From positions 1-36,146 of the forward strand of contig NIVC01004752.1 of the NCBI GenBank assembly GCA_002269645.1: DNA of 36,146 nucleotides, read 5' to 3'. A program made the translations under genes and the position numbers. Shown here piece after piece: positions 2,945 through 33,999 of this stretch (its first letter is position 1; every line of letters begins with the position of its first letter). Below the pieces are notes generated by a model. The model was not told the DNA's origin. It searched no databases and was given only the letters and a program-made list of their open reading frames with translations. The stretch is from Macrostomum lignano. Its lineage: Eukaryota.

Positions 2945-4291
2945 GCGGTGAGGAGGCACCCAACATGGACCACGTACGGCGCACATCGTCGCAGTTCCAA
3001 AGAAGCCGTAGGCACCACGAGGCTTGAGGAGCATCGAGGTATCTGCCTTCAGTCCTGCGCTGCGAAGTTTTTCAACCGGATGCTGTTATCGCGGTTGCAG
3101 CCTAGCCGCAGAACGACTTCCGGCCCCATCGCGGCACAGTGACGCAGATCCTGGCTCTTCAGCGAGTCATCGAGGAAGCACGGATGCGGCAGTCGATCCT
3201 GATTGTTATCTTCATAGATTTCAAGAAGACATTCGACTCGGTGGTCGGCTCTGTGCTCCCAAAGGCGCTCCGTGCGTACAACGTGCCAGAGCAGCTGATT
3301 TCCGCCATCATGGCGATGTACCGCGATACGAAAGCTGCTCTTTCAACACCGGACGGCCTATCGGACTTTTTTGAAAAATTCTCCGGGGTGCCTCAGGGAG
3401 ATACGCTTGCACCGTTCCTGTTCGCTCTGGTGCTTGACTGGTACGTGCTGCACGCACGGATCGCTCTTACGACGACGGCTTTCTGTTGCGGCGACGCGTG
3501 GGTCGACGTCAACCGGAGAGGCGGCTCAGCGTGCTTGCCTACGCTGGCGATCTCGCGGCCTGCTGTCCTCAACTGTCGAGCCCAGCGACAACTGTGCAAG
3601 CTATACTACTAGTTGCTGTTGCGGCGAGTGTCGGCCTGGTGGTCAACACGCAGAAGACCGTCGTGCTCTGCGTGCCGGACGACATCGAGGCTGAAATTTT
3701 GTGAGAGGCGCTATAATGGACAGGCAACAGAGCTTCCGCGTTTTCAGCAGTTCATCTACCTCGGCGGTCTGGTTTCCGCCGTCCGCGAGGATTTGCGGCG
3801 TCGCCGCGGGCTTGCCTGGGCTAGCTGCCTTTCGTTCTGTGAAGGCAGTCCTGCAGTCCGAGGCTGTAACTGACCGCCAAAGGGTGGCGTTGTTCCAGGC
3901 GGTGATCGAGACCGTTCTGCTGTACAACGCCGAGACCTGGACGCTGAAGGAGTCGCTGGCCTGCTGGTCTGCTGCGCGCAGCCTTTAAAATCGGTTTTAC
4001 GAGTGAGTGACCAACGCGGCTTTGTATCACCGCGTCGGCCTGGTGTCTGTCCCATGCAGCGACCTGTTGCGCCGTCGGCGCCTCCAGCTGGCAGGCCGCA
4101 TCATCCGCGCCGAGTCGTACTGCCCAGAGCCGGTGCAGGAGGTGCTGCTGCTAACGCTGCAGGCACCCTACCGGCGGGGGCAGGCGCGCACTCGGCGTTT
4201 CATCGACTGCCTGCTGGCTGACGCCGGCGCCCCGGATTCGGCCGGCGGCGTGGCGTTCATTCGCGACCGGGGCTTGAGGCGCGCCCTGTGA
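2945..4291 (+). mobile_element. 5'-truncated, frameshifted non-LTR retrotransposon (RTE-like LINE), reverse transcriptase region
   Basis: RT motifs are spread over successive frames: RGICLQSCAAKFFNRML, FIDFKKTFDSV, GVPQGDTLAPFLF, LAYAGDLA (YADD changed to YAGD at 3540-3551), GLVVNTQKT, FIYLG, VLLYNAETWTL. A T-rich tail follows the stop at 4291. The clade assignment is from motif recall. Confidence 0.9.
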
Positions 4292-10060: not shown

Positions 10061-16516
<6,456 letters not shown>

Positions 16517-19480: not shown

Positions 19481-20322
19481 TCACACGGAAGCAACGCCGA
19501 ACGCCTCGAACTCGCACAAGTTGATGTCCCGCGGGTGGTAGGTTCTGCGGTTCACAATCCTCACTTGCGAGCCGAACGTGCCGCAGGTGAAGTTGGCCAT
19601 GGAGAACGGCACGCTGACGTTCACCTGCTTGCATTCGGACCCGTCAACGAGGAGATCGAGAGTGTTGAATCTGTCAGAGCAGCAGTCCTGCCTGTTGTGG
19701 ATGGTGACGAAGGACACGAAAGACAGGGCGGCGAGGACGGCCTCCCACCACTCATTCATGTTGCTTCCAGTGCAGGAACCAGCATGCAAATTCGAGTTCG
19801 TGTTGCCGTCAATGGCCCGCTGGAAGACATTGTCCTGAGCTCGAACTCTGGTCGCAGTCGAGAATCTGCAGCTTCTCCAAAGCTGGATTCGGGTCAATAA
19901 AGACATGAAAATTGAAATAATCTGCATTGCATAGGCTTAATACACTTAGTTACATACAATAAGGTTTTGAAAACTTGGGAAGCTTCAAGCAAACTTTTAC
20001 ACCCAAAGCCTACCTATTACGAAGACCTCGCACTTGCCGGTGCTGACCCAGGCGCTGGCAATGTAAAACGCCTGCATGTCAAACAGCCGACACGCTCCGA
20101 GCAGCCAATAGAAGCCGAAGCAGTCCGGCCTGAGGCCGCACATGAAGCCGCAGCTGATCTTGTTGGGTCCGGGCAGAGAAGCGAAATCTAGCCGAGCGAC
20201 AGCGCTGCCACTGTTGGACTTGGTGAATTTCAGGACCAAGTTGCCGCCCTCAGCAGCAAAGAGAATTGCAAGACAATGGTGCTCATGGCAACCATGAAGT
20301 GTATAACAAATCTGATGAGCAT
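19481..20322 (-). pseudogene. Frameshifted paralog of the PAN + F-type lectin gene
   Basis: Same phase-1 intron position (intron 20013-19883) and same motifs (CGFMC..CFGFYWLLGACRLFD, AIDGN, NRQDCC). The signal-peptide ATGs (20322/20295/20286) are out of frame with the PAN domain. A second frameshift lies at about 19817-19835. The fucose-binding His is absent (SCTGS instead of SCTHT). Confidence 0.75.
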
Positions 20323-23186: not shown

Positions 23187-24667
23187 ATGCGCCACTTGCT
23201 TCTGATCTCCCTGCTACTTGGCGTGACAGCTCATCGTCTCAATGCTGTCGGCAGCGCAATCTGGCGGCGAGTGCAGCTCAACCTGACTGAGTACCGAACT
23301 CTGCAAGTTTTCCCCAGCAGTAAGCTCATCGAGTGCCTGACTGCTGCCACTGCCGACACCGACGCCGTGCTGTTCGCTGAGCAGACGGGGCTGTGCAGCC
23401 TCATGAGCTGCCCGAAGGGCCGGCTGGGCTGTCAGAAATGTCGGCATTTCAATCAACCGGACCTGCCGCCGTCCGTCTGGGTGAGTTCGACTCACCGAGT
23501 TTCCAGTTCTCGCCTTCAAAAACTTGATGATGAGATGAACAAGCACACTCCAGCTGCCTTTTCTTTGAGATACCGAAACAAAACATGATAATATTAATTA
23601 GAGACTTAGCGAGCAATTCTAGCTGAGATATCAAGGCTCAAAGTTGATAATTCTTGATATCAGACCTATTTCTTTCCTGCTTTTTGCACATTTAATTTCT
23701 AAGAAAGTAAGCATAGCATTACGTTTTTTAATAAGGAGCTTTTTGGGTATTTTTTTCTTTGTTGTCTCCCCAACGGGGGCTACAACTGCTATTCCAATGA
23801 ACAAATTTCGCTCTATTAAAAAAATTAAGGACCACTGTAGCATCAGGTCCAGGACGCAAAAGTTTCAATCGAAGAGAACTCATTGGACAGTCCGATTTTA
23901 ATCTCGAGTTTGCACATTGACTTCATTTGATTCTTGGAAGCATTCGAAGTTAGGATTTTTTACTGCATGGAAAACTAAAGTAAAAGGAGGCAATATCTCA
24001 CCTGGACTTTAGCTGGTCATTCGAGCCATCTTACTGTCGAATCCGTTCGCTTTATCATCTAACGCAGATTCGAGCATCTCAGAGTCGCGTCACTTGCTGG
24101 AGAACCTTCCAGCACAGGGTTGACGGCTCGCTGAGCTTCAACCGCAACTGGGCCGCGTACGTCAGCGGCTTCGGCCAGACCGAGCACGCCAACTTCTGGA
24201 TGGGCCTGCAGCCGCTGCACCTTCTGACTCTGGACGGCACTCGGCGACTCCGGTTTGAGTTCGGCGACTGGGACGGCAACTGGTACTGGACGGAGAATCC
24301 CAACTTCACGGTAGCTGGCTCAGCCGACAATTACCGAGTCAGGATCGGGCCACTCGATGCCAGCAGGTCCAGCGTGCCCCAGTACAACCGCGGCTCTATG
24401 TGGAATATCCACAACTTTCAGTTCTCCACTCCTGATCAGGACAATGACGTGGCTGCAGTGAACTGCGCCTCCCTGCGCTCGGCTGGCTGGTGGTACGGCT
24501 ACTGCAACTCCTTCAACCCCAACGGAATCTACTATGCGCCTCCGTTTCCGCCGGGCTTCGACTCCAGCTACTCACCTCTGTACTATTTCTACGACGGCTC
24601 CACGACCCCGCTCGACATGGACTACTCCATGCAAACTGTCGAGTGCCTGGTCGAGGATACACCTTGA
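23187..24667 (+). CDS. Secreted PAN/apple-like + fibrinogen-related domain (FReD, ficolin-like) protein, 2 exons, 297 aa
   Basis: Exon 1 23187-23480 has a signal peptide and Cys pattern, with donor TGG|gtgagt. Exon 2 24068-24667 is in phase 0 and has WRTFQHRVDGSLSFNRNWAAYVSGFG, FWMGL, LRFEFGDWDG, FSTPDQDND, NCA..AGWWYGYC and NPNG. Confidence 0.88.
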
Positions 24668-25849: not shown

Positions 25850-27535
25850 TCCCCAGATAGAAAGACAATGGGGGTGTATTTTAAATACACACATTTTCCT
25901 TTGTCTGTATCTCCGAAAATATTCAACCAATTGCCATGAAACTCCCGAACACGGGCAAAAATTTTCCACTCTATTCGATGGAGCAACTTCGAGAATCACA
26001 AAAAATCGGCATCGTCGAGATATTCAACGATTCTCCTCGGGGTGTCTGGTGGCAAAAACCACCAACATTGGCAAAATTTTTCTGCTCACAAAATCTCATC
26101 ATGAAACCACGTCGGCTCGACAAACTATGCATATCAGTCGTAGAAGCCTTTGTTCTCAGCATTCTAGAAACCAGGGTCTCCTTCATCTCCGTCTGTAGCA
26201 TCGGCGGCGACCGTCGGGACCTTCAACGAAAGCACCCGATCGGTGTCTCAGAGACGGCTGCGTTCCCAAAACTGAAATGGAAGAATCCTCTTCTGCATGC
26301 AGCATTCAGTCAGTAGACATAATCGGTGAATGAAATGGACGACGGCGACCCTCTAGGCTGACCTGTAGACATACGGGCGACCTTCGGGACCTTCAACGGA
26401 GTGCCACCACGCGGCCCCGACGAGCTGGAACCGCCAACATCGTGATTTTTCTATCAAGGCACCAAACCAGGCATGTCTGCATATTATACAATGGTCCTGC
26501 ACCATGTTCAGCATTCAGCTCTGTCTGGACGACCTTCGGGACCTTCAACGGAGTGCCACCACGCGGCCCCGACGAGCTGGCACCCCACCAGTACTGCGCA
26601 CGTTGTACACCAAATTAAATAGTGACAATTGACTCCGCTTTTGTGTCTATTGGCCATTTGAATAAAGTGAGCAATAACTGGCGAGTTTCACCTCAAACTG
26701 ATTGAGCAAGAGCTTAAACTCGAGCAACTGCTCTGATCTGGAGCAGTTGCTCAATGTTCATATGAATAAAGAAATTTCTCAAATGCGGAGCATTTGCTCC
26801 TCATTCTGAGCAACTGCTTGGCACCTCTTGGCCATAGACAAAGAGAAAGCGGTTTTATATTTTTCTGTCGCCAATGAAATCGGTAACTCACCGATTTAAC
26901 ATGGTGCAGAACCATTGTATAATACGCAAACATGCCTGGTTTGGTGCCTTGATAGAAAAATCACGATGTTAGCGGTTCCAGCTCGTCGGGGCCGCGTGGT
27001 GGCACTCCGTTGAAGATCCCGAAGGTCGCCTGTATGTCTACAGGTCAGCCTAGAGGGTCGCCATCGTCCATTTCATTCACCGATTATGTCTAATGTTTGA
27101 ATGCTGCATGCAGAAGACGATTCTTCCATTTCAGCTTTGGGAACGCAGCCGTCTCTGAGACGCCGATCGGGTGCTTTCGTTGAAGGTCCCGACGGTCGCC
27201 GCCGATGCTCCAGACGGAGATGAAGGGGACCCTGGTGTCTGGGATGCTGAGAACAAAGGCCTCTACGACAGATGGACCCAGATTATTGAGCCAATATGGA
27301 TTCATCATAAAGGTTTATACAGTGTAGTGTTGCCACCAGTGTCTTCGACAAGAATCGTTGAATATCTCGACGATGCTGACGTCGGATGACTTTGAAAGTT
27401 AGTTCGTCGAAAAGGGTGGAAAATTTTGATCCGTATGGTGGACTTTTACGAAAATTGGAAAATTCTGTTTGCGAGATATCGTGAAATGGGTCGTGTGTAT
27501 TTGTAATACACCCCGTGGTCTTTACCCATGGGGAA
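25850..27535. mobile_element. Long foldback / inverted-repeat structure, non-autonomous, family unknown
   Basis: 26137-26508 is a near-identical reverse complement of 26898-27269. The outer segments (about 25850-26136 and 27270-27535) still align but are more diverged. Outer boundaries are approximate. Confidence 0.8.
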
Positions 27536-27695
27536 AAATAGCGTGGTCTTTCTACTGTTAAGTATCCCAAAGTAGAGCACAGGAATCAAATTCATTCAAG
27601 ATACGTTGGCCCCTTAGCATTTTCTGACTCAAATTGTACTAAAAATTAAACATGAAATGACCAAACAAATCAATTCAATAATATTTTAGGCCAAC

Positions 27696-29383
27696 ATGCA
27701 ATGTTTTACATGTAAATGCTCTGTGGTCGGCGACAAGGGCGTTGGAAAAACCAGTCTGATCATAACTTCTGCAACCAGCCAGTTTCCATCGGAGTACGTG
27801 CCGAATACGTGCGACCCCAAGGAAATCACAGGAAAAATTGGTACAGAGGACTTCATGCTGCAATTAATTGACTTGCCGGTGCCACTGGAATACGACAGGT
27901 AAATCGAGTGCAACTGATCAGCTAAAATATAACTTTAAAACCTCTTATTAAAAGCCTGAAAGAAATCCACTTATAGCGGTCCGCAGGGCTGGCCATAGAC
28001 TATAAGTTAGCTGCCAGCTCAGCAGCACTCATCGATGTCTTTGGCTGTACATCAGACTGTACACTGCATGATAATTCATCTTGCTTTGCATACTTTCTAC
28101 TTTCCACTTCAGATTGCGTCCTCCCGCGTATCCCAGCTACGACGGCTACCTGATCTGCTTCTCGGTGATCGACCCGGCGTCATTTGAAAATGTGGAAACC
28201 AAATGGTTGCGAGAGGCTCCGAGTTACATCTACAATAGCAGTACTCCATTCGTCCTGATTGGCACCAAGGCAGATTTGAGGACAGACCCGGATGTGGTTG
28301 AGAAACTGGCAAAGAATGGAAGTGCGCCGGTCACCTTCAAGCAGGGAACAATGTTGGCTAAGAAGACTAAAGCTCTCAAGTACATTGAATGCAGTGCGCT
28401 GACACACGTGAGTGCCATTCTCTAAATATTCTGCAGGTGCTGGCGCCTCTGGTGCTGGCGCCTCTGGTGCTGGCGCCTCTGGTGCTGGCGCCTCTGGTGC
28501 TGGCGCCTCTGGTGCTGGCGCCTCTGGTGCTGGCGCCTCTGGTGCTGGCGCCTCTGGTGCTGGCGCCTCTGGTGCTGGCGCCTCTGGTGCTGGCGCCTCT
28601 GGTGCTGGCGCCTCTGGTGCTGGCGCCTCTGGTGCTGGCGCCTCTGGTGCTGGCGCCTCTGGTGCTGGCGCCTCTGGTGCTGGCGCCTCTGGTGCTGGCG
28701 CCTCTGGTGCTGGCGCCTCTGGTGCTGGCGCCTCTGGTGCTGGCGCCTCTGGTGCTGGCGCCTCTGGTGCTGGCGCCTCTGGTGCTGGCGCCTCTGGTGC
28801 TGGCGCCTCTGGTGCTGGCGCCTCTGGTGCTGGCGCCTCTGGTGCTGGCGCCTCTGGTGCTGGCGCCTCTGGTGCTGGCGCCTCTGGTGCTGGCGCCTCT
28901 GGTGCTGGCGCCTCTGGTGCTGGCGCCTCTGGTGCTGGCGCCTCTGGTGCTGGCGCCTCTGGTGCTGGCGCCTCTGGTGCTGGCGCCTCTGGTGCTGGCG
29001 CCTCTGGTGCTGGCGCCTCTGGTGCTGGCGCCTCTGGTGCTGGCGCCTCTGGTGCTGGCGCCTCTGGTGCTGGCGCCTCTGGTGCTGGCGCCTCTGGTGC
29101 TGGCGCCTCTGGTGCTGGCGCCTCTGGTGCTGGCGCCTCTGGTGCTGGCGCCTCTGGTGCTCCTAGAGGTCGTAGATAGAAGGTTGACTGCTTAATTCCA
29201 AGAATTAACTAAATTCAACCTAATCTAGACAGGTTGAAACTGTTGCAACATTTGCTGTAATAATCAGCAATTAAATTCAAATTGCAGGAAAATCTGACAT
29301 CTCTCCCTACGGAACTTGTCAGCGCTCTCCAGGAACAGTATCTCAAAAGGACCAAGAAGAAGAGAGAATGTCAAGTTCTGTAA
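27696..29383 (+). CDS. Atypical Cdc42/Rac-like Rho-family GTPase, 3 exons, 197 aa
   Basis: Exons 27696-27898, 28113-28407 and 29288-29383 splice in phase. Motifs: GDKGVGKT, FPSEYVP, EYDRLRP, CFSVIDPASFENVETKW, GTKADLR, the Rho insert, ECSALT, and the C-terminal KRTKKKRECQVL (polybasic + CAAX). AATAAA at 29432. Confidence 0.92.
28436..29161. repeat. Perfect 15-bp minisatellite (GGTGCTGGCGCCTCT)x48 in GTPase intron 2
   Basis: Units run from 28436 to 29155 with no variant seen, then a partial unit. Confidence 0.98.
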
Positions 29384-29739
29384 ATAACGACTCCTTATTA
29401 TTGCTACTTCACTACTGTGACGAACCTTGGCAATAAATTGCTGGGTTAAAACTAACTTTAAGGATGGTAATATATTTGTAAAAAGCTGAGATTGTCTGAA
29501 ATATATTCTTTTACTATTTCTCGCTTATTACTCTTGCTGATTACGGTATTTATTAATATTTTGATTTTAAATCTAATATTGTGAAAATTGTTTAACTTCA
29601 AACTTTTAATGTAAGTTTTTAGGTGTTGAATAAAAAAGATTACCACCAAAAAAATTTACGCTCGAATATTTAATTACTCAACAGTAGAATTTCTTGTTTT
29701 TTGTAACTTTATTTTATTTTATTCCAGCTGTGCTTGGGT

Positions 29740-30237
29740 CCCCGCCTGACAATTTTACGTGAATTTACGAAAAAATTACGAAAAAAAATTTGGCTTTTTC
29801 TCAATATGTCACGTAAGATTACGTAAATATTCTTCCTTTTTTACGTAAATTTTACGGATTGCGGATTTTTTTCTTTGTAACCACAACTTTAGTGGGAAAC
29901 AAGACAAAATCATACTATTCCCTGATTACTGTAAATACATTTTCTTTCGATAGTTTAGCACATGACCCCGAAAAAAGCGTTTCGTAATTTTTTTACCTAA
30001 TTTTTCCGTATTTTTTCGGAAATTAGTTACGTGTATTTTACGTTTAAACAAATCGGAATTTTTTACGAAGCTTTAGTGAGCAATCAAAAAAGAGGCTTCA
30101 ATTAATTATACTTTTGTATGTAAATGAAACCAAATAAAACCCTTTTTGACCAATGAGACCCCAAAAAATAAAGTTTTTTTTCGTGAAAAAATTAACTTAA
30201 CTTTTACGTATTGCTTACGAGAAATTGTCAGGCGGGG
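29740..30237. mobile_element. MITE with 16-bp TIR CCCCGCCTGACAATTT and internal TTACG subrepeats
   Basis: The inverted ends are directly visible. No standard TSD could be resolved. Confidence 0.75.
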
Positions 30238-32469: not shown

Positions 32470-33999
32470 ATGCAGGCAGAAAATGCAGTCAAAGCTGCTG
32501 CCAGTGGTACAAGAGAAGATCTGGAAAAATATTTGCAAAAGATTTCGGACAGAGACAGCTCGGACAAGTGTTGCACGGAGGCGACAAAAGCTGCAGCCTG
32601 CAGCAGCCAATGGCCACGGAGAAGTTGTCGCTGCTCTGATGGAATTCTTTTTCGACGAAAGCAGTAAAGTTAGTTGTTGTGCGGAAGCAGCCTGGATCGC
32701 TGCAGGAAATCAGCACTGGAATGTTGTGACTTTTTTGGTGCAAAGCATCTCTGACGAACAACTGCGAGATGACTTCTGTTCATCTTACATAAAGGCCGTT
32801 TCGGAAAACGCTGGCACAACAGACGAAACTTTTGAAGACGCTCCTGCACTTGCAAATAACGATCTTTTTAACCATGAGCTCATTATTTTTCTAGCAGGTA
32901 CAATTAGCGATGGGCAACTCAAAGATCAATACTGCATGGACGCTGCAGAATCTGCGTCCAGCCATGGCAATATGAACTGTGTGGCCTCTCTTGGGCAGAT
33001 GATTTCTGATTCGGACGGCCGGGATTCTTTCTGCATCTCCTATGCAGAGCAATCTGCTGCATCCAATTGCTTGGAAGCAGCTACTTCGCTTTTAAGAAAT
33101 ATTTCTAATCCAGCACTTAGAGATAAAAAATGCATCGATTTTGCTGAATCCTTTGTATTATCTGGCAGTTGGGATATCGCGAAGTCTCTAGTTGAGCTGA
33201 TCGCTGACCCCAGTCGCAGGTATCTGTGCTGCATGAAGCTTGCAGACTTAGCACATTCATCTGCTCAGTGCGAAGATCTGGTTTTTCTGGCTCTAACCAT
33301 TGAAGACAAAAACATGAGGGATCAGTGCTGCCTGAAAGCAGTAGAAATCCTTGCAGACAGAAACGAATGGAATGAAGTGAAAACTTTCATTGAGATCATT
33401 GACGATCAAAGCATTCTCGAAAGTAGCTGCATGATAACTGCAGGGGCTGCAGCAGATACGAAAAACTGGGATGTTGTCGCGACTGGCAAGTATATTCCTT
33501 CCAGCATGTTGCTGAAAGACGAGTACTGGAGGTCCGCGACGGAGACTGTTGCAGAAAAGATGGATATCCGCAGACTCAACGAGTTTCTTGTGTCCACTGC
33601 TTCAAAAGCCGGAGTCGGGGTCAGTTCCGATCTTTATTCCTCAAGCTCGGACGGAACAGCAGTGGCAGCCATTCCAGCTGACTGGCTGCTCCGCAACTCT
33701 CCACTGCTGAAGCTGCTCTCTCAGCACCTGGAGATTCCTGGTGACGATTCAGTTTTACGATATACGCTGTCTAAAATGCATGCCGTTCGCATCGCTCAAC
33801 TGCTCTGCCTGTCCATCACGCACAGTCTTGTCGCACTGGCACTCACGATAATCAGAAGCCAATACTATAGCGACACGCATGTCGATCAGCAGAATAGCAC
33901 AGGAGCAACGCTTTAATGCTGGCAGCAGATGCGGGTCAGCACGACGTCATCAATGAATTGTTACTTCACGGTGCGTCTGTGAGGGCTGCAGATGGCAAG
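32470..33999 (+). pseudogene. 33-aa helical-repeat protein ending in a canonical ankyrin repeat; two frameshifts
   Basis: Repeats of the form I(S/D)DxxxRDxxC...AA..(G)..W..V..L recur at a 33-aa period. Frameshift 1 is a tandem duplication of CTGCAGC (32591-32604). Frameshift 2 at about 33910-33915 separates NSTGAT from MLAADAGQHDVINELLLHGASVRAADGK. Possible donor aag|gtcgga at 34000. Confidence 0.7.

What the first reader, a model, noticed from the sequence alone, without database searches (positions are those of the whole stretch)
27696..29383. Cdc42-like protein with dismantled switch regions: candidate pseudo-GTPase
Seen (Cdc42 numbering): G12K and A13G in the P-loop (GDKGVGKT), T35N in switch I (YVPNTCD for YVPTVFD), and DTAGQ replaced by DLPVP (T58L, A59P, G60V, Q61P). 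G4 (GTKAD), G5 (CSA), the Rho insert, three clean exons and polybasic+CQVL are all retained. Established: T35 and G60 sense the gamma-phosphate/Mg2+, and G12/Q61 are required for hydrolysis. Atypical Rho proteins such as Rnd and RhoH alter 12/59/61 but usually keep T35 and G60. Inference: a membrane-anchored, switch-dead Rho paralog that could act as a GEF/GDI decoy or scaffold.
Basis: partly seen in the sequence, partly recalled or inferred. Interest (0 to 1): 0.72.

Follow-up and report, generated by a model that had tools for sequence, protein, structure and literature searches.

The report
Switch-less Cdc42 duplicate in a flatworm
The flatworm Macrostomum lignano carries an intact, fast-evolved copy of the cell-polarity switch gene Cdc42 that keeps its nucleotide pocket and lipid anchor but has lost the residues that let it switch, so it is a good but untested candidate pseudo-GTPase.

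Summary
Window 27696-29383 (+) holds a three-exon gene with GT..AG introns. It encodes a 197-aa Rho-family protein most similar to Cdc42. It has GDKGVGKT (G12K, A13G), YVPNTCD (T35N) and DLPVP in place of DTAGQ. G4 (TKAD), G5 (CSAL), the Rho insert and KKKRE-CQVL are intact.

The organism is Macrostomum lignano. Three UniProt models are 99% identical and carry the same substitutions. Nothing closer than about 52% identity exists elsewhere in the two protein libraries searched.

Both introns sit at exactly the positions and phases of one canonical M. lignano Cdc42 gene, so this is a DNA-level Cdc42 duplicate. Its non-synonymous branch is 6-10 times longer than those of the canonical copies. Even so, the reading frame and all nine core nucleotide-contact residues survive, which neutral simulations rarely allow (1% and 0.05%). 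A rough omega is about 0.4.

By the published sequence definition it is a pseudoGTPase. It probably binds nucleotide but does not switch or hydrolyse.

Biochemistry, expression data and orthologues were not available. Interest is moderate.

The parts
27680..27695 (+). Splice acceptor (aatattttAG at 27688-27689) followed by the 6-nt leader GCCAAC. This is the probable spliced-leader trans-splice site.
   Evidence: All three UniProt models start with 'AN', which is the translation of GCCAAC immediately after the AG. The M. lignano SL ends in ...TTGCATG (PMC8629364), so its ATG would be in frame and give M-A-N-M-Q. This is inferred and not shown by reads.
27696..27898 (+). Exon 1 (aa 1-68, ending 2 nt into codon 68). 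It holds the P-loop GDKGVGKT (27729-27752), switch I YVPNTCD (27795-27815) and DLPVP in place of DTAGQ (27870-27884).
   Evidence: The donor is GAC AG|gtaaat, at the R66-equivalent codon in phase 2. This is the same position as in the canonical Cdc42 gene L002.
27899..28112 (+). Intron 1 (214 nt, GT..AG, 41% GC).
28113..28407 (+). Exon 2 (aa 68-166). It holds the retained YDRLRP part of switch II, G4 TKAD (28264-28275), the Rho insert (28285-28326) and G5 CSAL (28390-28401).
   Evidence: A tblastn search finds no other Rho-like exon in the window.
28408..29287 (+). Intron 2 (880 nt, GT..AG, phase 0). It lies at the ancient Cdc42 intron position after Q162 and contains a perfect 15-bp minisatellite at 28436-29161.
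   Evidence: The same intron position is found in both M. lignano Cdc42 genes, a cestode and a rotifer.
29288..29383 (+). Exon 3 (aa 167-197 plus the stop codon). It holds helix alpha-5, the polybasic KRTKKKRE (29345-29368) and the CAAX box CQVL (29369-29380).
   Evidence: A C-terminal Leu in a CAAX box predicts geranylgeranylation (established knowledge).
29432..29437 (+). AATAAA polyadenylation signal, 49 nt after the stop codon.

Best explanation
This is a lineage-specific, selectively maintained duplicate of a Macrostomum lignano Cdc42 gene.

Its product keeps the Rho G-domain fold and the guanine-nucleotide pocket: P-loop GxxxxGKT, F28, D57, TKxD and SAL. It also keeps the polybasic-CAAX membrane anchor. 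It has lost both anchors of the GTP-dependent 'loaded spring' (T35 and G60). It has also lost the residues needed for hydrolysis (Q61, with G12 replaced by a bulky Lys), the Cdc42 effector loop (F37, N39, Y40, A41) and most GDI and GEF contact residues.

The most likely mode of action is therefore a geranylgeranylated, constitutively membrane-associated protein that probably carries nucleotide. Its conformation would not report nucleotide state, and it would not be regulated by GAP, DH-GEF or RhoGDI. This makes it a class-ii-like pseudoGTPase. It would act through newly evolved surfaces, with output set by expression level and turnover rather than by a GTPase cycle.

Shown here: the sequence features, the Cdc42 descent, the intact ORF, and the non-random retention of pocket residues. 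Inferred: nucleotide binding, absence of switching and hydrolysis, prenylation, and the mode of regulation.
For: Fold and family:
- Pfam Ras matches at 3.7e-29.
- Human Cdc42 structures score 176 bits, against 158 or less for Rac.
- The AF2 model matches Cdc42/Rac structures with TM 0.79-0.88.

Descent:
- Both introns share position and phase with the canonical Cdc42 gene L002/P0049: inside the R66 codon in phase 2, and after Q162 in phase 0.
- The Q162 intron is also present in cestode and rotifer Cdc42 genes.
- Canonical Cdc42 genes coexist in the genome (P0049, P0090).

Motif loss:
- The changes are seen in the window copy and in three UniProt copies.
- Of 268 Rho-like domains, 229 keep both T35 and G60. 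Only 10 lack both, and 4 of those are this gene.

Selection:
- Neutral simulations run to 50% amino-acid divergence stay stop-free in 0.7-1.1% of runs. They keep all nine nucleotide-contact residues in 0.05% of runs.
- Retention is higher at conserved columns than at variable columns (65/110 against 32/81, Fisher p=0.009).
- dN on the atypical branch is about 0.39, against 0.04-0.07 on the canonical branches, while dS is about 1. This gives a rough omega of about 0.4.
- GC3 is 0.57, against 0.35-0.41 in the introns.

Regulator and effector surfaces:
- 7 of 11 RhoGDI-1 G-domain contacts are lost, including H103 (PMC8253491).
- 4 of 6 intersectin-groove residues are lost (PMC8286826).
- A59 and E62, used by DH GEFs, are changed (PMC6767298).

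Definition and classes of pseudoGTPases: PMC5593906.
Against: - RGK proteins also lack canonical G2 and G3 motifs yet still hydrolyse GTP (class iii, PMC5593906), so loss of hydrolysis is not certain.
- T35 and G60 substitutions weaken Mg2+ and gamma-phosphate binding, so the protein could be nucleotide-free (class i).
- dS against the canonical paralogues is saturated (1.3 to undefined), so the omega estimate is crude.
- No orthologue from another species was found, so long-term conservation of the derived residues is unproven.
- The four known copies are 99% identical and count as one observation.
- AF2 gave low confidence in both switch regions, but so did the canonical Cdc42 control run with the same alignment. 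The model therefore says nothing specific about the switches.
- The NJ tree position is unresolved because of the long branch.
- Expression is only inferred from the form of the UniProt models.
Confidence: 0.55

Rival explanations
1. Non-canonical but working GTPase (class iii, RGK-like). The protein would still bind and slowly hydrolyse GTP, or be switched by an unusual partner, with other residues (for example N35, or K12 acting in cis on the phosphates) replacing the lost ones.
For: G1, G4, G5, F28 and D57 are all kept, far beyond neutral expectation. RGK proteins diverge at several G motifs yet still catalyse hydrolysis (PMC5593906). [quoted passage not shown]
Against: Pro at positions 59 and 61 and Val at position 60 remove both the gamma-phosphate contact and the catalytic Gln. 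No residue in the new sequence stands out as an obvious substitute. A Lys at position 12 would occupy the space used by the GAP arginine finger (established knowledge from Ras G12 mutants; PMC13236570).
Confidence: 0.2
2. Nucleotide-free scaffold (class i pseudoGTPase). Loss of T35, G60 and nearby residues would abolish stable Mg2+ and nucleotide binding, and the fold would serve only as a prenylated interaction module.
For: T35 and the DxxG region contribute to Mg2+ and gamma-phosphate binding (established knowledge). 45 of 110 near-invariant Cdc42 positions are changed, including residues in helix alpha-1 next to the P-loop.
Against: Retention of G10, G15, K16, T17, F28, D57, K116, D118, S158 and A159 is hard to explain if the pocket is unused (0.05% under neutrality). 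Known class i members have degraded G1, G4 and G5 motifs (PMC5593906, PMC12490416).
Confidence: 0.12
3. Functionless duplicate drifting towards a pseudogene after the recent whole-genome duplication in M. lignano.
For: M. lignano has an excess of duplicated genes (PMC10468722). The branch is very long. No orthologue is known.
Against: The divergence is shared by all four copies, so it predates the recent duplication. The ORF, both splice-site pairs, the CAAX box and the pocket residues are intact at about 50% divergence, which occurs in about 1% or fewer of neutral runs. A rough omega is about 0.4. The UniProt models reproduce both splice junctions and begin exactly at a splice acceptor, as an SL-trimmed transcript would (PMC8629364).
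Confidence: 0.1
4. One reading: a decoy that sequesters Rho GEFs or RhoGDI.
For: Y64, D65, R66, L67, R68 and P69 of switch II, the polybasic region and the geranylgeranyl-type CAAX box are retained. From my own knowledge, G60A-type Ras mutants are known to trap GEFs.
Against: T35N, V36T, A59P, L70P, E95T, H103S and H104Y remove 7 of 11 RhoGDI-1 contacts. Replacement of H103 is the explanation PMC8253491 gives for non-binding of TC10, TCL and the Wrch proteins. Only D38 and D57 of the six intersectin-groove residues remain (PMC8286826). A59 and E62, used in DH-catalysed exchange, are changed (PMC6767298).
Confidence: 0.1

Closest known systems
Canonical Cdc42 (human CDC42; M. lignano BOX15_Mlig011286g1 / P0049)
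   Same: It has the Rho G-domain fold, a Rho insert, a polybasic-CAAX tail ending in Leu, and about 48-50% identity. It shares the three-exon structure, with both introns at identical positions and phases to the P0049 gene.
   Different: 45 of 110 near-invariant Cdc42 positions are changed. T35, G60, Q61, G12 and the effector loop are lost. Its non-synonymous branch is 6-10 times longer. It is a paralogue, not the Cdc42 orthologue.
Rnd1-3 and RhoH (GTPase-deficient atypical Rho proteins; class ii pseudoGTPases)
   Same: They are Rho-family proteins with substitutions at the positions equivalent to 12, 59 and 61. They are prenylated, insensitive to GAPs, not RhoGDI-1 targets, and regulated by expression and turnover (PMC13236570, PMC8253491, PMC5593906).
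   Different: Rnd and RhoH keep Thr35 (PMC8253491, Table 2) and, from my own knowledge, Gly60. They therefore still adopt a GTP-bound 'on' conformation. This protein has lost both residues and also the effector loop. It is not orthologous to them, since its best similarity and gene structure are Cdc42.
RGK family (Rad, Rem, Gem/Kir; class iii pseudoGTPases)
   Same: They are small GTPases in which G2 and G3 are non-canonical while the nucleotide pocket is kept. The switch regions do not behave canonically (PMC5593906).
   Different: RGK proteins belong to the Ras branch. From my own knowledge, they have no Rho insert and no CAAX box, and they carry long N- and C-terminal extensions. They retain some hydrolysis.
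Sporadic switch-degenerate Rho-like proteins in other eukaryotes (for example Anaeramoeba ignava KAJ5069578.1 = P0205, and the unnamed P0233 and P0235)
   Same: They are Rho-like domains lacking both T35 and G60 while keeping GK[ST], [NT]KxD and SA.
   Different: They are no closer to this protein (40-45% identity) than ordinary Cdc42 is. They represent independent losses in unrelated lineages, and none has been characterised.

Membership tests
Rho family of small GTPases | Ras-like G-domain fold | tested here: met
   Pfam PF00071 matches at 3.7e-29. The AF2 model (pLDDT 74.9) matches Cdc42/Rac structures with TM 0.79-0.88.
Rho family of small GTPases | Rho insert helix between beta-5 and alpha-4 | tested here: met
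   The alignment across Cdc42 residues 122-135 is ungapped, with 8 of 14 residues identical to the consensus. The model shows a helix at residues 127-135.
Rho family of small GTPases | C-terminal polybasic region plus CAAX box | tested here: met
   The sequence KRTKKKRE-CQVL is followed by the stop codon. Actual prenylation was not testable.
Cdc42 subfamily (descent) | Closest similarity to Cdc42 rather than Rac or Rho | tested here: met
   The 36 best distinct PDB sequences are all Cdc42 (170-176 bits), and Rac scores 158 or less. Mean distance is 0.53 to Cdc42, 0.61 to Rac and 0.65 to Rho. The NJ topology itself is unresolved because of the long branch.
Cdc42 subfamily (descent) | Shared gene structure with a bona fide Cdc42 gene | tested here: met
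   The introns inside the R66 codon (phase 2) and after Q162 (phase 0) are identical to those of M. lignano Cdc42 L002/P0049.
Cdc42 orthologue (function) | Conserved effector loop and switch residues (T35, F37, Y40, DTAGQ) | tested here: not met
   T35N, F37C, N39P, Y40K, A41E and DTAGQ to DLPVP. Canonical Cdc42 genes exist elsewhere in the genome.
Active small GTPase (five G motifs) | G1 GxxxxGK[ST] | tested here: met
   GDKGVGKT. Positions 12 and 13 are changed, but the motif pattern is intact.
Active small GTPase (five G motifs) | G2 switch I threonine | tested here: not met
   T35N in all four copies.
Active small GTPase (five G motifs) | G3 DxxG (plus the catalytic Q) | tested here: not met
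   DLPVP. D57 is kept, G60 is Val and Q61 is Pro.
Active small GTPase (five G motifs) | G4 [NT]KxD and G5 SA[KL] | tested here: met
   TKAD and CSAL.
PseudoGTPase (Stiegler & Boggon, PMC5593906) | [quoted passage not shown] | tested here: met
   The fold is present, and G2 and G3 are lost.
PseudoGTPase class ii (binds nucleotide, no catalysis) | Nucleotide binding demonstrated and hydrolysis absent | not testable with these tools
   This is only predicted, from retained G1, G4, G5 and F28 and from lost Q61, G60 and G12. It needs mant-nucleotide binding and hydrolysis assays.
Rnd/RhoH-type atypical Rho | Changes at positions 12, 59 and 61 with T35 and G60 retained, giving a constitutively GTP-bound 'on' state | tested here: not met
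   Positions 12, 59 and 61 are changed, but T35 and G60 are also lost. Rnd and RhoH keep Thr35 (PMC8253491, Table 2).
RhoGDI-1 client | Conserved contacts T35, V36, A59, Y64, R66, L67, L70, E95, E100, H103 and H104, plus the polybasic region | tested here: not met
   Only Y64, R66, L67, E100 and the polybasic stretch are retained, and H103 is Ser (against PMC8253491, Table 2). Binding itself was not assayed.

The most novel reading that the evidence does not exclude
A Cdc42-derived, geranylgeranylated pseudoGTPase that has given up both spring anchors (T35 and G60) yet is kept under selection with an intact guanine pocket. It would be a nucleotide-loaded but state-blind membrane module with a rebuilt effector face, evolved within the Macrostomum lineage. 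It may have arisen in part through a compensated frameshift across the DTAGQ codons, because the Ala-Gly hexamer GCCGGT persists one base out of frame. This would be an animal Rho-family counterpart of the RGK solution and a natural experiment in how a switch becomes a scaffold.
Probability: 0.3. Interest if true: 0.6.

Novelty: new variant of a known kind. Interest (0 to 1): 0.45.

Why it matters
PseudoGTPases are a small group that is still being defined. Within the human Rho family, the GTPase-deficient members (Rnd, RhoH) keep the switch I threonine, so they still adopt an 'on' conformation.

A prenylated Cdc42 duplicate that has lost both gamma-phosphate sensors, while retaining every core nucleotide-contact residue under apparent purifying selection, would show that a Rho protein can be converted into a nucleotide-holding, state-independent membrane module.

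M. lignano is a laboratory model with transgenesis, RNAi and in situ methods. The idea is therefore directly testable, and the canonical parent gene sits in the same genome for comparison. The finding is limited in scope: one lineage, no orthologues yet and no functional data.

Tried and rejected
1. AF2 as a test of switch disorder. The query has low pLDDT at residues 27-39 and 63-73. The canonical M. lignano Cdc42 control, run with the same alignment, is also low in both switches. This was rejected as evidence.

2. Search for orthologues. The word-indexed search of 5.8 billion proteins and the exhaustive HMMER search of 1.84 billion representatives found nothing closer than about 52% identity except the gene's own cluster. 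Other Macrostomum species may simply not be in these libraries.

3. DNA of the other M. lignano copies, for dN/dS among copies. P0001 and P0121 are not on record as called genes.

4. Pairwise dN/dS against the canonical paralogues. dS is saturated, undefined under NG86 for one pair, and YN00 fails. Only a rough three-taxon omega of about 0.4 could be derived.

5. NJ phylogeny. The query groups with other long-branch sequences, so placement is unresolved. The Cdc42 assignment rests instead on scores, distances and intron positions.

6. Tandem copies or alternative C-terminal exons in the window. None were found.

7. Retrocopy origin. This was rejected because both ancestral introns are present.

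8. Literature. No paper linking M. lignano to an atypical Cdc42 or Rho protein was found. The key pseudoGTPase review (PMC7544640) is not held.

9. Compensated-frameshift origin of DLPVP. This rests only on a 6-nt out-of-frame match, with a chance probability of about 0.02-0.03, and is kept as speculation.
Full report
**1. What is in the sequence**

Reading window 27300-29800 and splicing in silico gives a three-exon gene on the + strand. The exons are 27696-27898, 28113-28407 and 29288-29383. Both introns are GT..AG. The CDS is 594 nt and encodes 197 aa:

MQCFTCKCSVVGDKGVGKTSLIITSATSQFPSEYVPNTCDPKEITGKIGTEDFMLQLIDLPVPLEYDRLRPPAYPSYDGYLICFSVIDPASFENVETKWLREAPSYIYNSSTPFVLIGTKADLRTDPDVVEKLAKNGSAPVTFKQGTMLAKKTKALKYIECSALTHENLTSLPTELVSALQEQYLKRTKKKRECQVL*

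An AATAAA signal lies 49 nt after the stop codon. No second Rho-like exon or copy exists in the window.

**2. Check of the observation**

- Pfam assigns the Ras family at 3.7e-29.
- In a search of PDB sequences, the 36 best distinct hits are all Cdc42 (170-176 bits). Rac follows at 158 bits or less.
- The printed alignment confirms, in Cdc42 numbering: G12K, A13G, T35N, T58L, A59P, G60V and Q61P.
- It also confirms retention of G4 (TKAD), G5 (CSAL), an ungapped Rho insert and the polybasic-CQVL tail.

Against 68 Cdc42 orthologues from animals and fungi, the protein departs at 45 of 110 columns that are at least 95% conserved. These include V36T, F37C, N39P, Y40K, A41E, M45K, F56I, E62L, L70P, H103S and H104Y.

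**3. Organism and copies**

The only close relatives among 5.8 billion clustered proteins are three UniProt entries from the free-living flatworm Macrostomum lignano: A0A1I8G5Q0, A0A1I8H664 and A0A1I8J975. They are 99% identical and auto-named 'Ras-related C3 botulinum toxin substrate 1'.

- They differ from the window copy at one or two residues each. All keep DKGVGKT, VPNTCD and DLPVP, and both exon junctions.
- M. lignano is a hidden polyploid with many recent duplicates (PMC10468722). These entries are therefore alleles or homeologues, and together they count as one evolutionary observation.
- All three models begin with 'AN'. This is the translation of GCCAAC, which lies directly after a splice acceptor (ttttAG at 27688-27689).
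- The 35-nt M. lignano spliced leader ends in ...TTGCATG, and about 30% of genes are trans-spliced (PMC8629364).
- A trans-spliced mRNA would therefore carry an in-frame SL ATG, reading M-A-N-M-Q.

I take this as indirect evidence that the models derive from SL-trimmed transcripts, and hence that the gene is expressed. It is an inference.

**4. No orthologue was found**

The word-indexed search and an exhaustive HMMER scan of 1.84 billion representatives returned nothing above about 52% identity apart from the gene's own cluster. The next hits are ordinary Cdc42 proteins. Other Macrostomum species may not be represented in these libraries, so this is absence of evidence only.

**5. Descent from Cdc42**

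I fetched the two canonical M. lignano Cdc42 genes from assembly GCA_002269645.1: P0090 as L001 and P0049 as L002.

- The P0049 gene has introns inside the R66 codon (phase 2: GAT AG|gtgagc...ccag|A CTG) and after Q162 (phase 0).
- The atypical gene has introns at exactly the same two positions and phases: GAC AG|gtaaat...tcag|A TTG, and CAC|gtgagt...gcag|GAA.
- The P0090 gene has its first intron after Q61 instead.
- A cestode Cdc42 gene has introns after T35, near K96 and after Q162. A rotifer gene has only the Q162 intron.

The atypical gene is therefore a DNA-level duplicate of a Cdc42 gene, most simply of the P0049 type, and not a retrocopy. A neighbour-joining tree could not place it, because its terminal branch is 0.35 against a median of 0.04 for Cdc42. 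Its mean distance is nevertheless smallest to Cdc42 (0.53), against 0.61 for Rac and 0.65 for Rho.

**6. Maintained or decaying?**

- (a) Starting from this CDS or from the P0049 CDS, neutral substitution to 50% amino-acid divergence leaves the frame stop-free in only 0.7% and 1.1% of 2000 runs. Indels were ignored.
- (b) All nine core nucleotide-contact residues (G10, G15, K16, T17, F28, D57, D118, S158 and A159) survive in the real protein, but in only 0.05% of neutral runs.
- (c) Retention is higher at conserved columns than at variable Cdc42 columns (65/110 against 32/81, Fisher p=0.009).
- (d) dN is 0.43-0.46 against either canonical paralogue, compared with 0.105 between the two canonical genes.
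- On a three-taxon tree, about 0.39 of the non-synonymous change falls on the atypical branch, against 0.04 and 0.07 on the others. The synonymous branch length is about 1. This gives omega of about 0.4, compared with about 0.1 between the two canonical genes.
- dS is saturated, so this figure is rough. It is clearly not 1.
- (e) GC3 is 0.57, against 0.35-0.41 in non-repeat intron sequence.

Together these argue for a burst of relaxed or adaptive change followed by purifying selection, and against neutral decay.

**7. What the protein can and cannot do (inference from established GTPase mechanism)**

- The P-loop pattern, T17, F28, D57, K116/D118 and S158/A159 are kept. A guanine nucleotide pocket is therefore likely.
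- T35 and G60, the two residues that clamp the switches onto the gamma-phosphate, are both gone.
- Q61 is Pro, and position 12 carries Lys. Non-glycine residues at position 12 and altered switch II are the cited reasons why Rnd and RhoH are GTPase-deficient and GAP-insensitive (PMC13236570).
- The beta-2 effector strand (VFDNYAVTVM to TCDPKEITGK) is rewritten, including Y40. By established knowledge this is required for CRIB effectors.
- Of the Cdc42 residues that contact RhoGDI-1 (T35, V36, A59, Y64, R66, L67, L70, E95, E100, H103, H104 and the polybasic pair), only Y64, R66, L67, E100 and the basic stretch remain.
- H103 is Ser. That paper finds H103 conserved in all RhoGDI-1 targets, and its replacement explains why TC10, TCL and the Wrch proteins do not bind (PMC8253491).
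- Of the intersectin-groove residues T35, V36, D38, N39, F56 and D57, two remain (PMC8286826).
- A59 and E62, which DH GEFs exploit during exchange, are changed (PMC6767298).

The most coherent reading is a geranylgeranylated, membrane-resident protein that probably carries nucleotide and is blind to nucleotide state. It would lie outside GAP, GEF and GDI control and would signal, if at all, through new surfaces.

**8. Structure prediction**

AF2 with a 72-sequence alignment gives a Cdc42-like fold (pLDDT 74.9). Foldseek TM scores are 0.79-0.88 to Cdc42/Rac structures.

Both switch regions have pLDDT below 50. The same is true for canonical M. lignano Cdc42 predicted with the same alignment. 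The model supports the fold and nothing more.

**9. How unusual is it?**

- Among 268 Rho-like domains from the two searches, 229 keep both T35 and G60.
- 29 lack one of the two.
- 10 lack both, and four of these are this gene.
- The others that lack both come from protists such as Anaeramoeba, or from unnamed metagenomic eukaryotes. They are no closer to this protein than Cdc42 is.

Such losses therefore occur sporadically and independently. Among human Rho proteins, all keep Thr (Ser in RhoF) at position 35 (PMC8253491).

[quoted passage not shown] The class cannot be assigned without assays: (i) no binding, (ii) binding without catalysis, or (iii) residual catalysis. I favour class ii.

**10. 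Verdict**

It holds for 'Cdc42-derived candidate pseudoGTPase, probably membrane-anchored'. It is weakened for 'GEF/GDI decoy'.
- Novelty: a new variant of a known kind, namely a Rho-derived pseudoGTPase with G2 and G3 loss like the RGK proteins, but with Rho features and a CAAX box.
- Interest is moderate (0.45). The gene is real, unusual, apparently selected, and sits in a tractable model. It is confined to one lineage and has no functional data.

Noticed in passing
window 28436-29161 (inside intron 2): A perfect minisatellite: the 15-bp unit GGTGCTGGCGCCTCT repeated 48.4 times with 100% identity between copies. It raises local GC to 62% and is open in two + frames, as (GAGAS)n and (LAPLV)n. 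It is spliced out of the gene. Such perfect identity suggests a very recent expansion or an assembly collapse or expansion.
   Followed up: partly
window 25927-27458: A large inverted repeat lies just upstream of the gene. The inner arms are 26098-26508 and 26898-27308 (411 nt, 92% complementary). The outer arms are 25927-26055 and 27330-27458. The arms carry matching ORF fragments with no Pfam hit. It looks like a foldback or transposon-like element and ends about 240 nt before the ATG.
   Followed up: partly
window 27870-27887, compared with L001 3196-3213 and L002 698-715: The Ala-Gly hexamer of DTAGQ (GCC GGA or GCT GGT in the canonical genes) persists in the atypical gene as GCCGGT, but one base out of frame (T TGC CGG TG, read as TTG CCG GTG = L P V). 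This hints that the motif was destroyed by a compensated frameshift or small indels rather than by four separate missense changes. The chance probability is about 0.02-0.03, so this is only suggestive.
   Followed up: partly
window 27690-27698: GCCAAC follows the acceptor AG and precedes the ATG. The M. lignano spliced leader ends in ATG (PMC8629364), which would be in frame and would add Met-Ala-Asn to the N-terminus if it is used.
   Followed up: partly
window 27696-27722 (aa 1-9): The N-terminus is two residues longer than in Cdc42 and has two extra cysteines (MQCFTCKC against MQTIKC). Whether these are acylation sites or structurally relevant is unknown.
   Followed up: no
L001 about 3640-4020 (intron 2 of canonical Cdc42 P0090): The homologous intron of the canonical M. 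lignano Cdc42 gene is also filled with simple repeats, here (GACA)n and (GATA)n. The ancient Q162 intron therefore hosts repeat expansions in both paralogues.
   Followed up: no
L001 against L002: The two canonical M. lignano Cdc42 paralogues differ in the position of their first intron: after Q61 in phase 0, against inside R66 in phase 2, which is 14 nt apart. This is a case of intron sliding or of loss and gain between otherwise 87%-identical proteins.
   Followed up: partly
window 3139-3612, 15596-16516, 19481-19927 (-), 24200-24667, 32483-33916: Neighbouring coding fragments are a reverse-transcriptase piece, a Cys-loop ligand-gated channel transmembrane exon, an F5/8-type-C or NedA-like galactose-binding domain, and a fibrinogen C-terminal domain. 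There is also a 477-aa single-exon ORF with internal repeats and no Pfam match.
   Followed up: partly
proteins P0205, P0233, P0235 (not in the window): Other Rho-like proteins lack both T35 and G60 while keeping G1, G4 and G5: Anaeramoeba ignava KAJ5069578.1 and two unnamed metagenomic eukaryote proteins. This is a scattered, uncharacterised set of possible Rho pseudoGTPases.
   Followed up: partly
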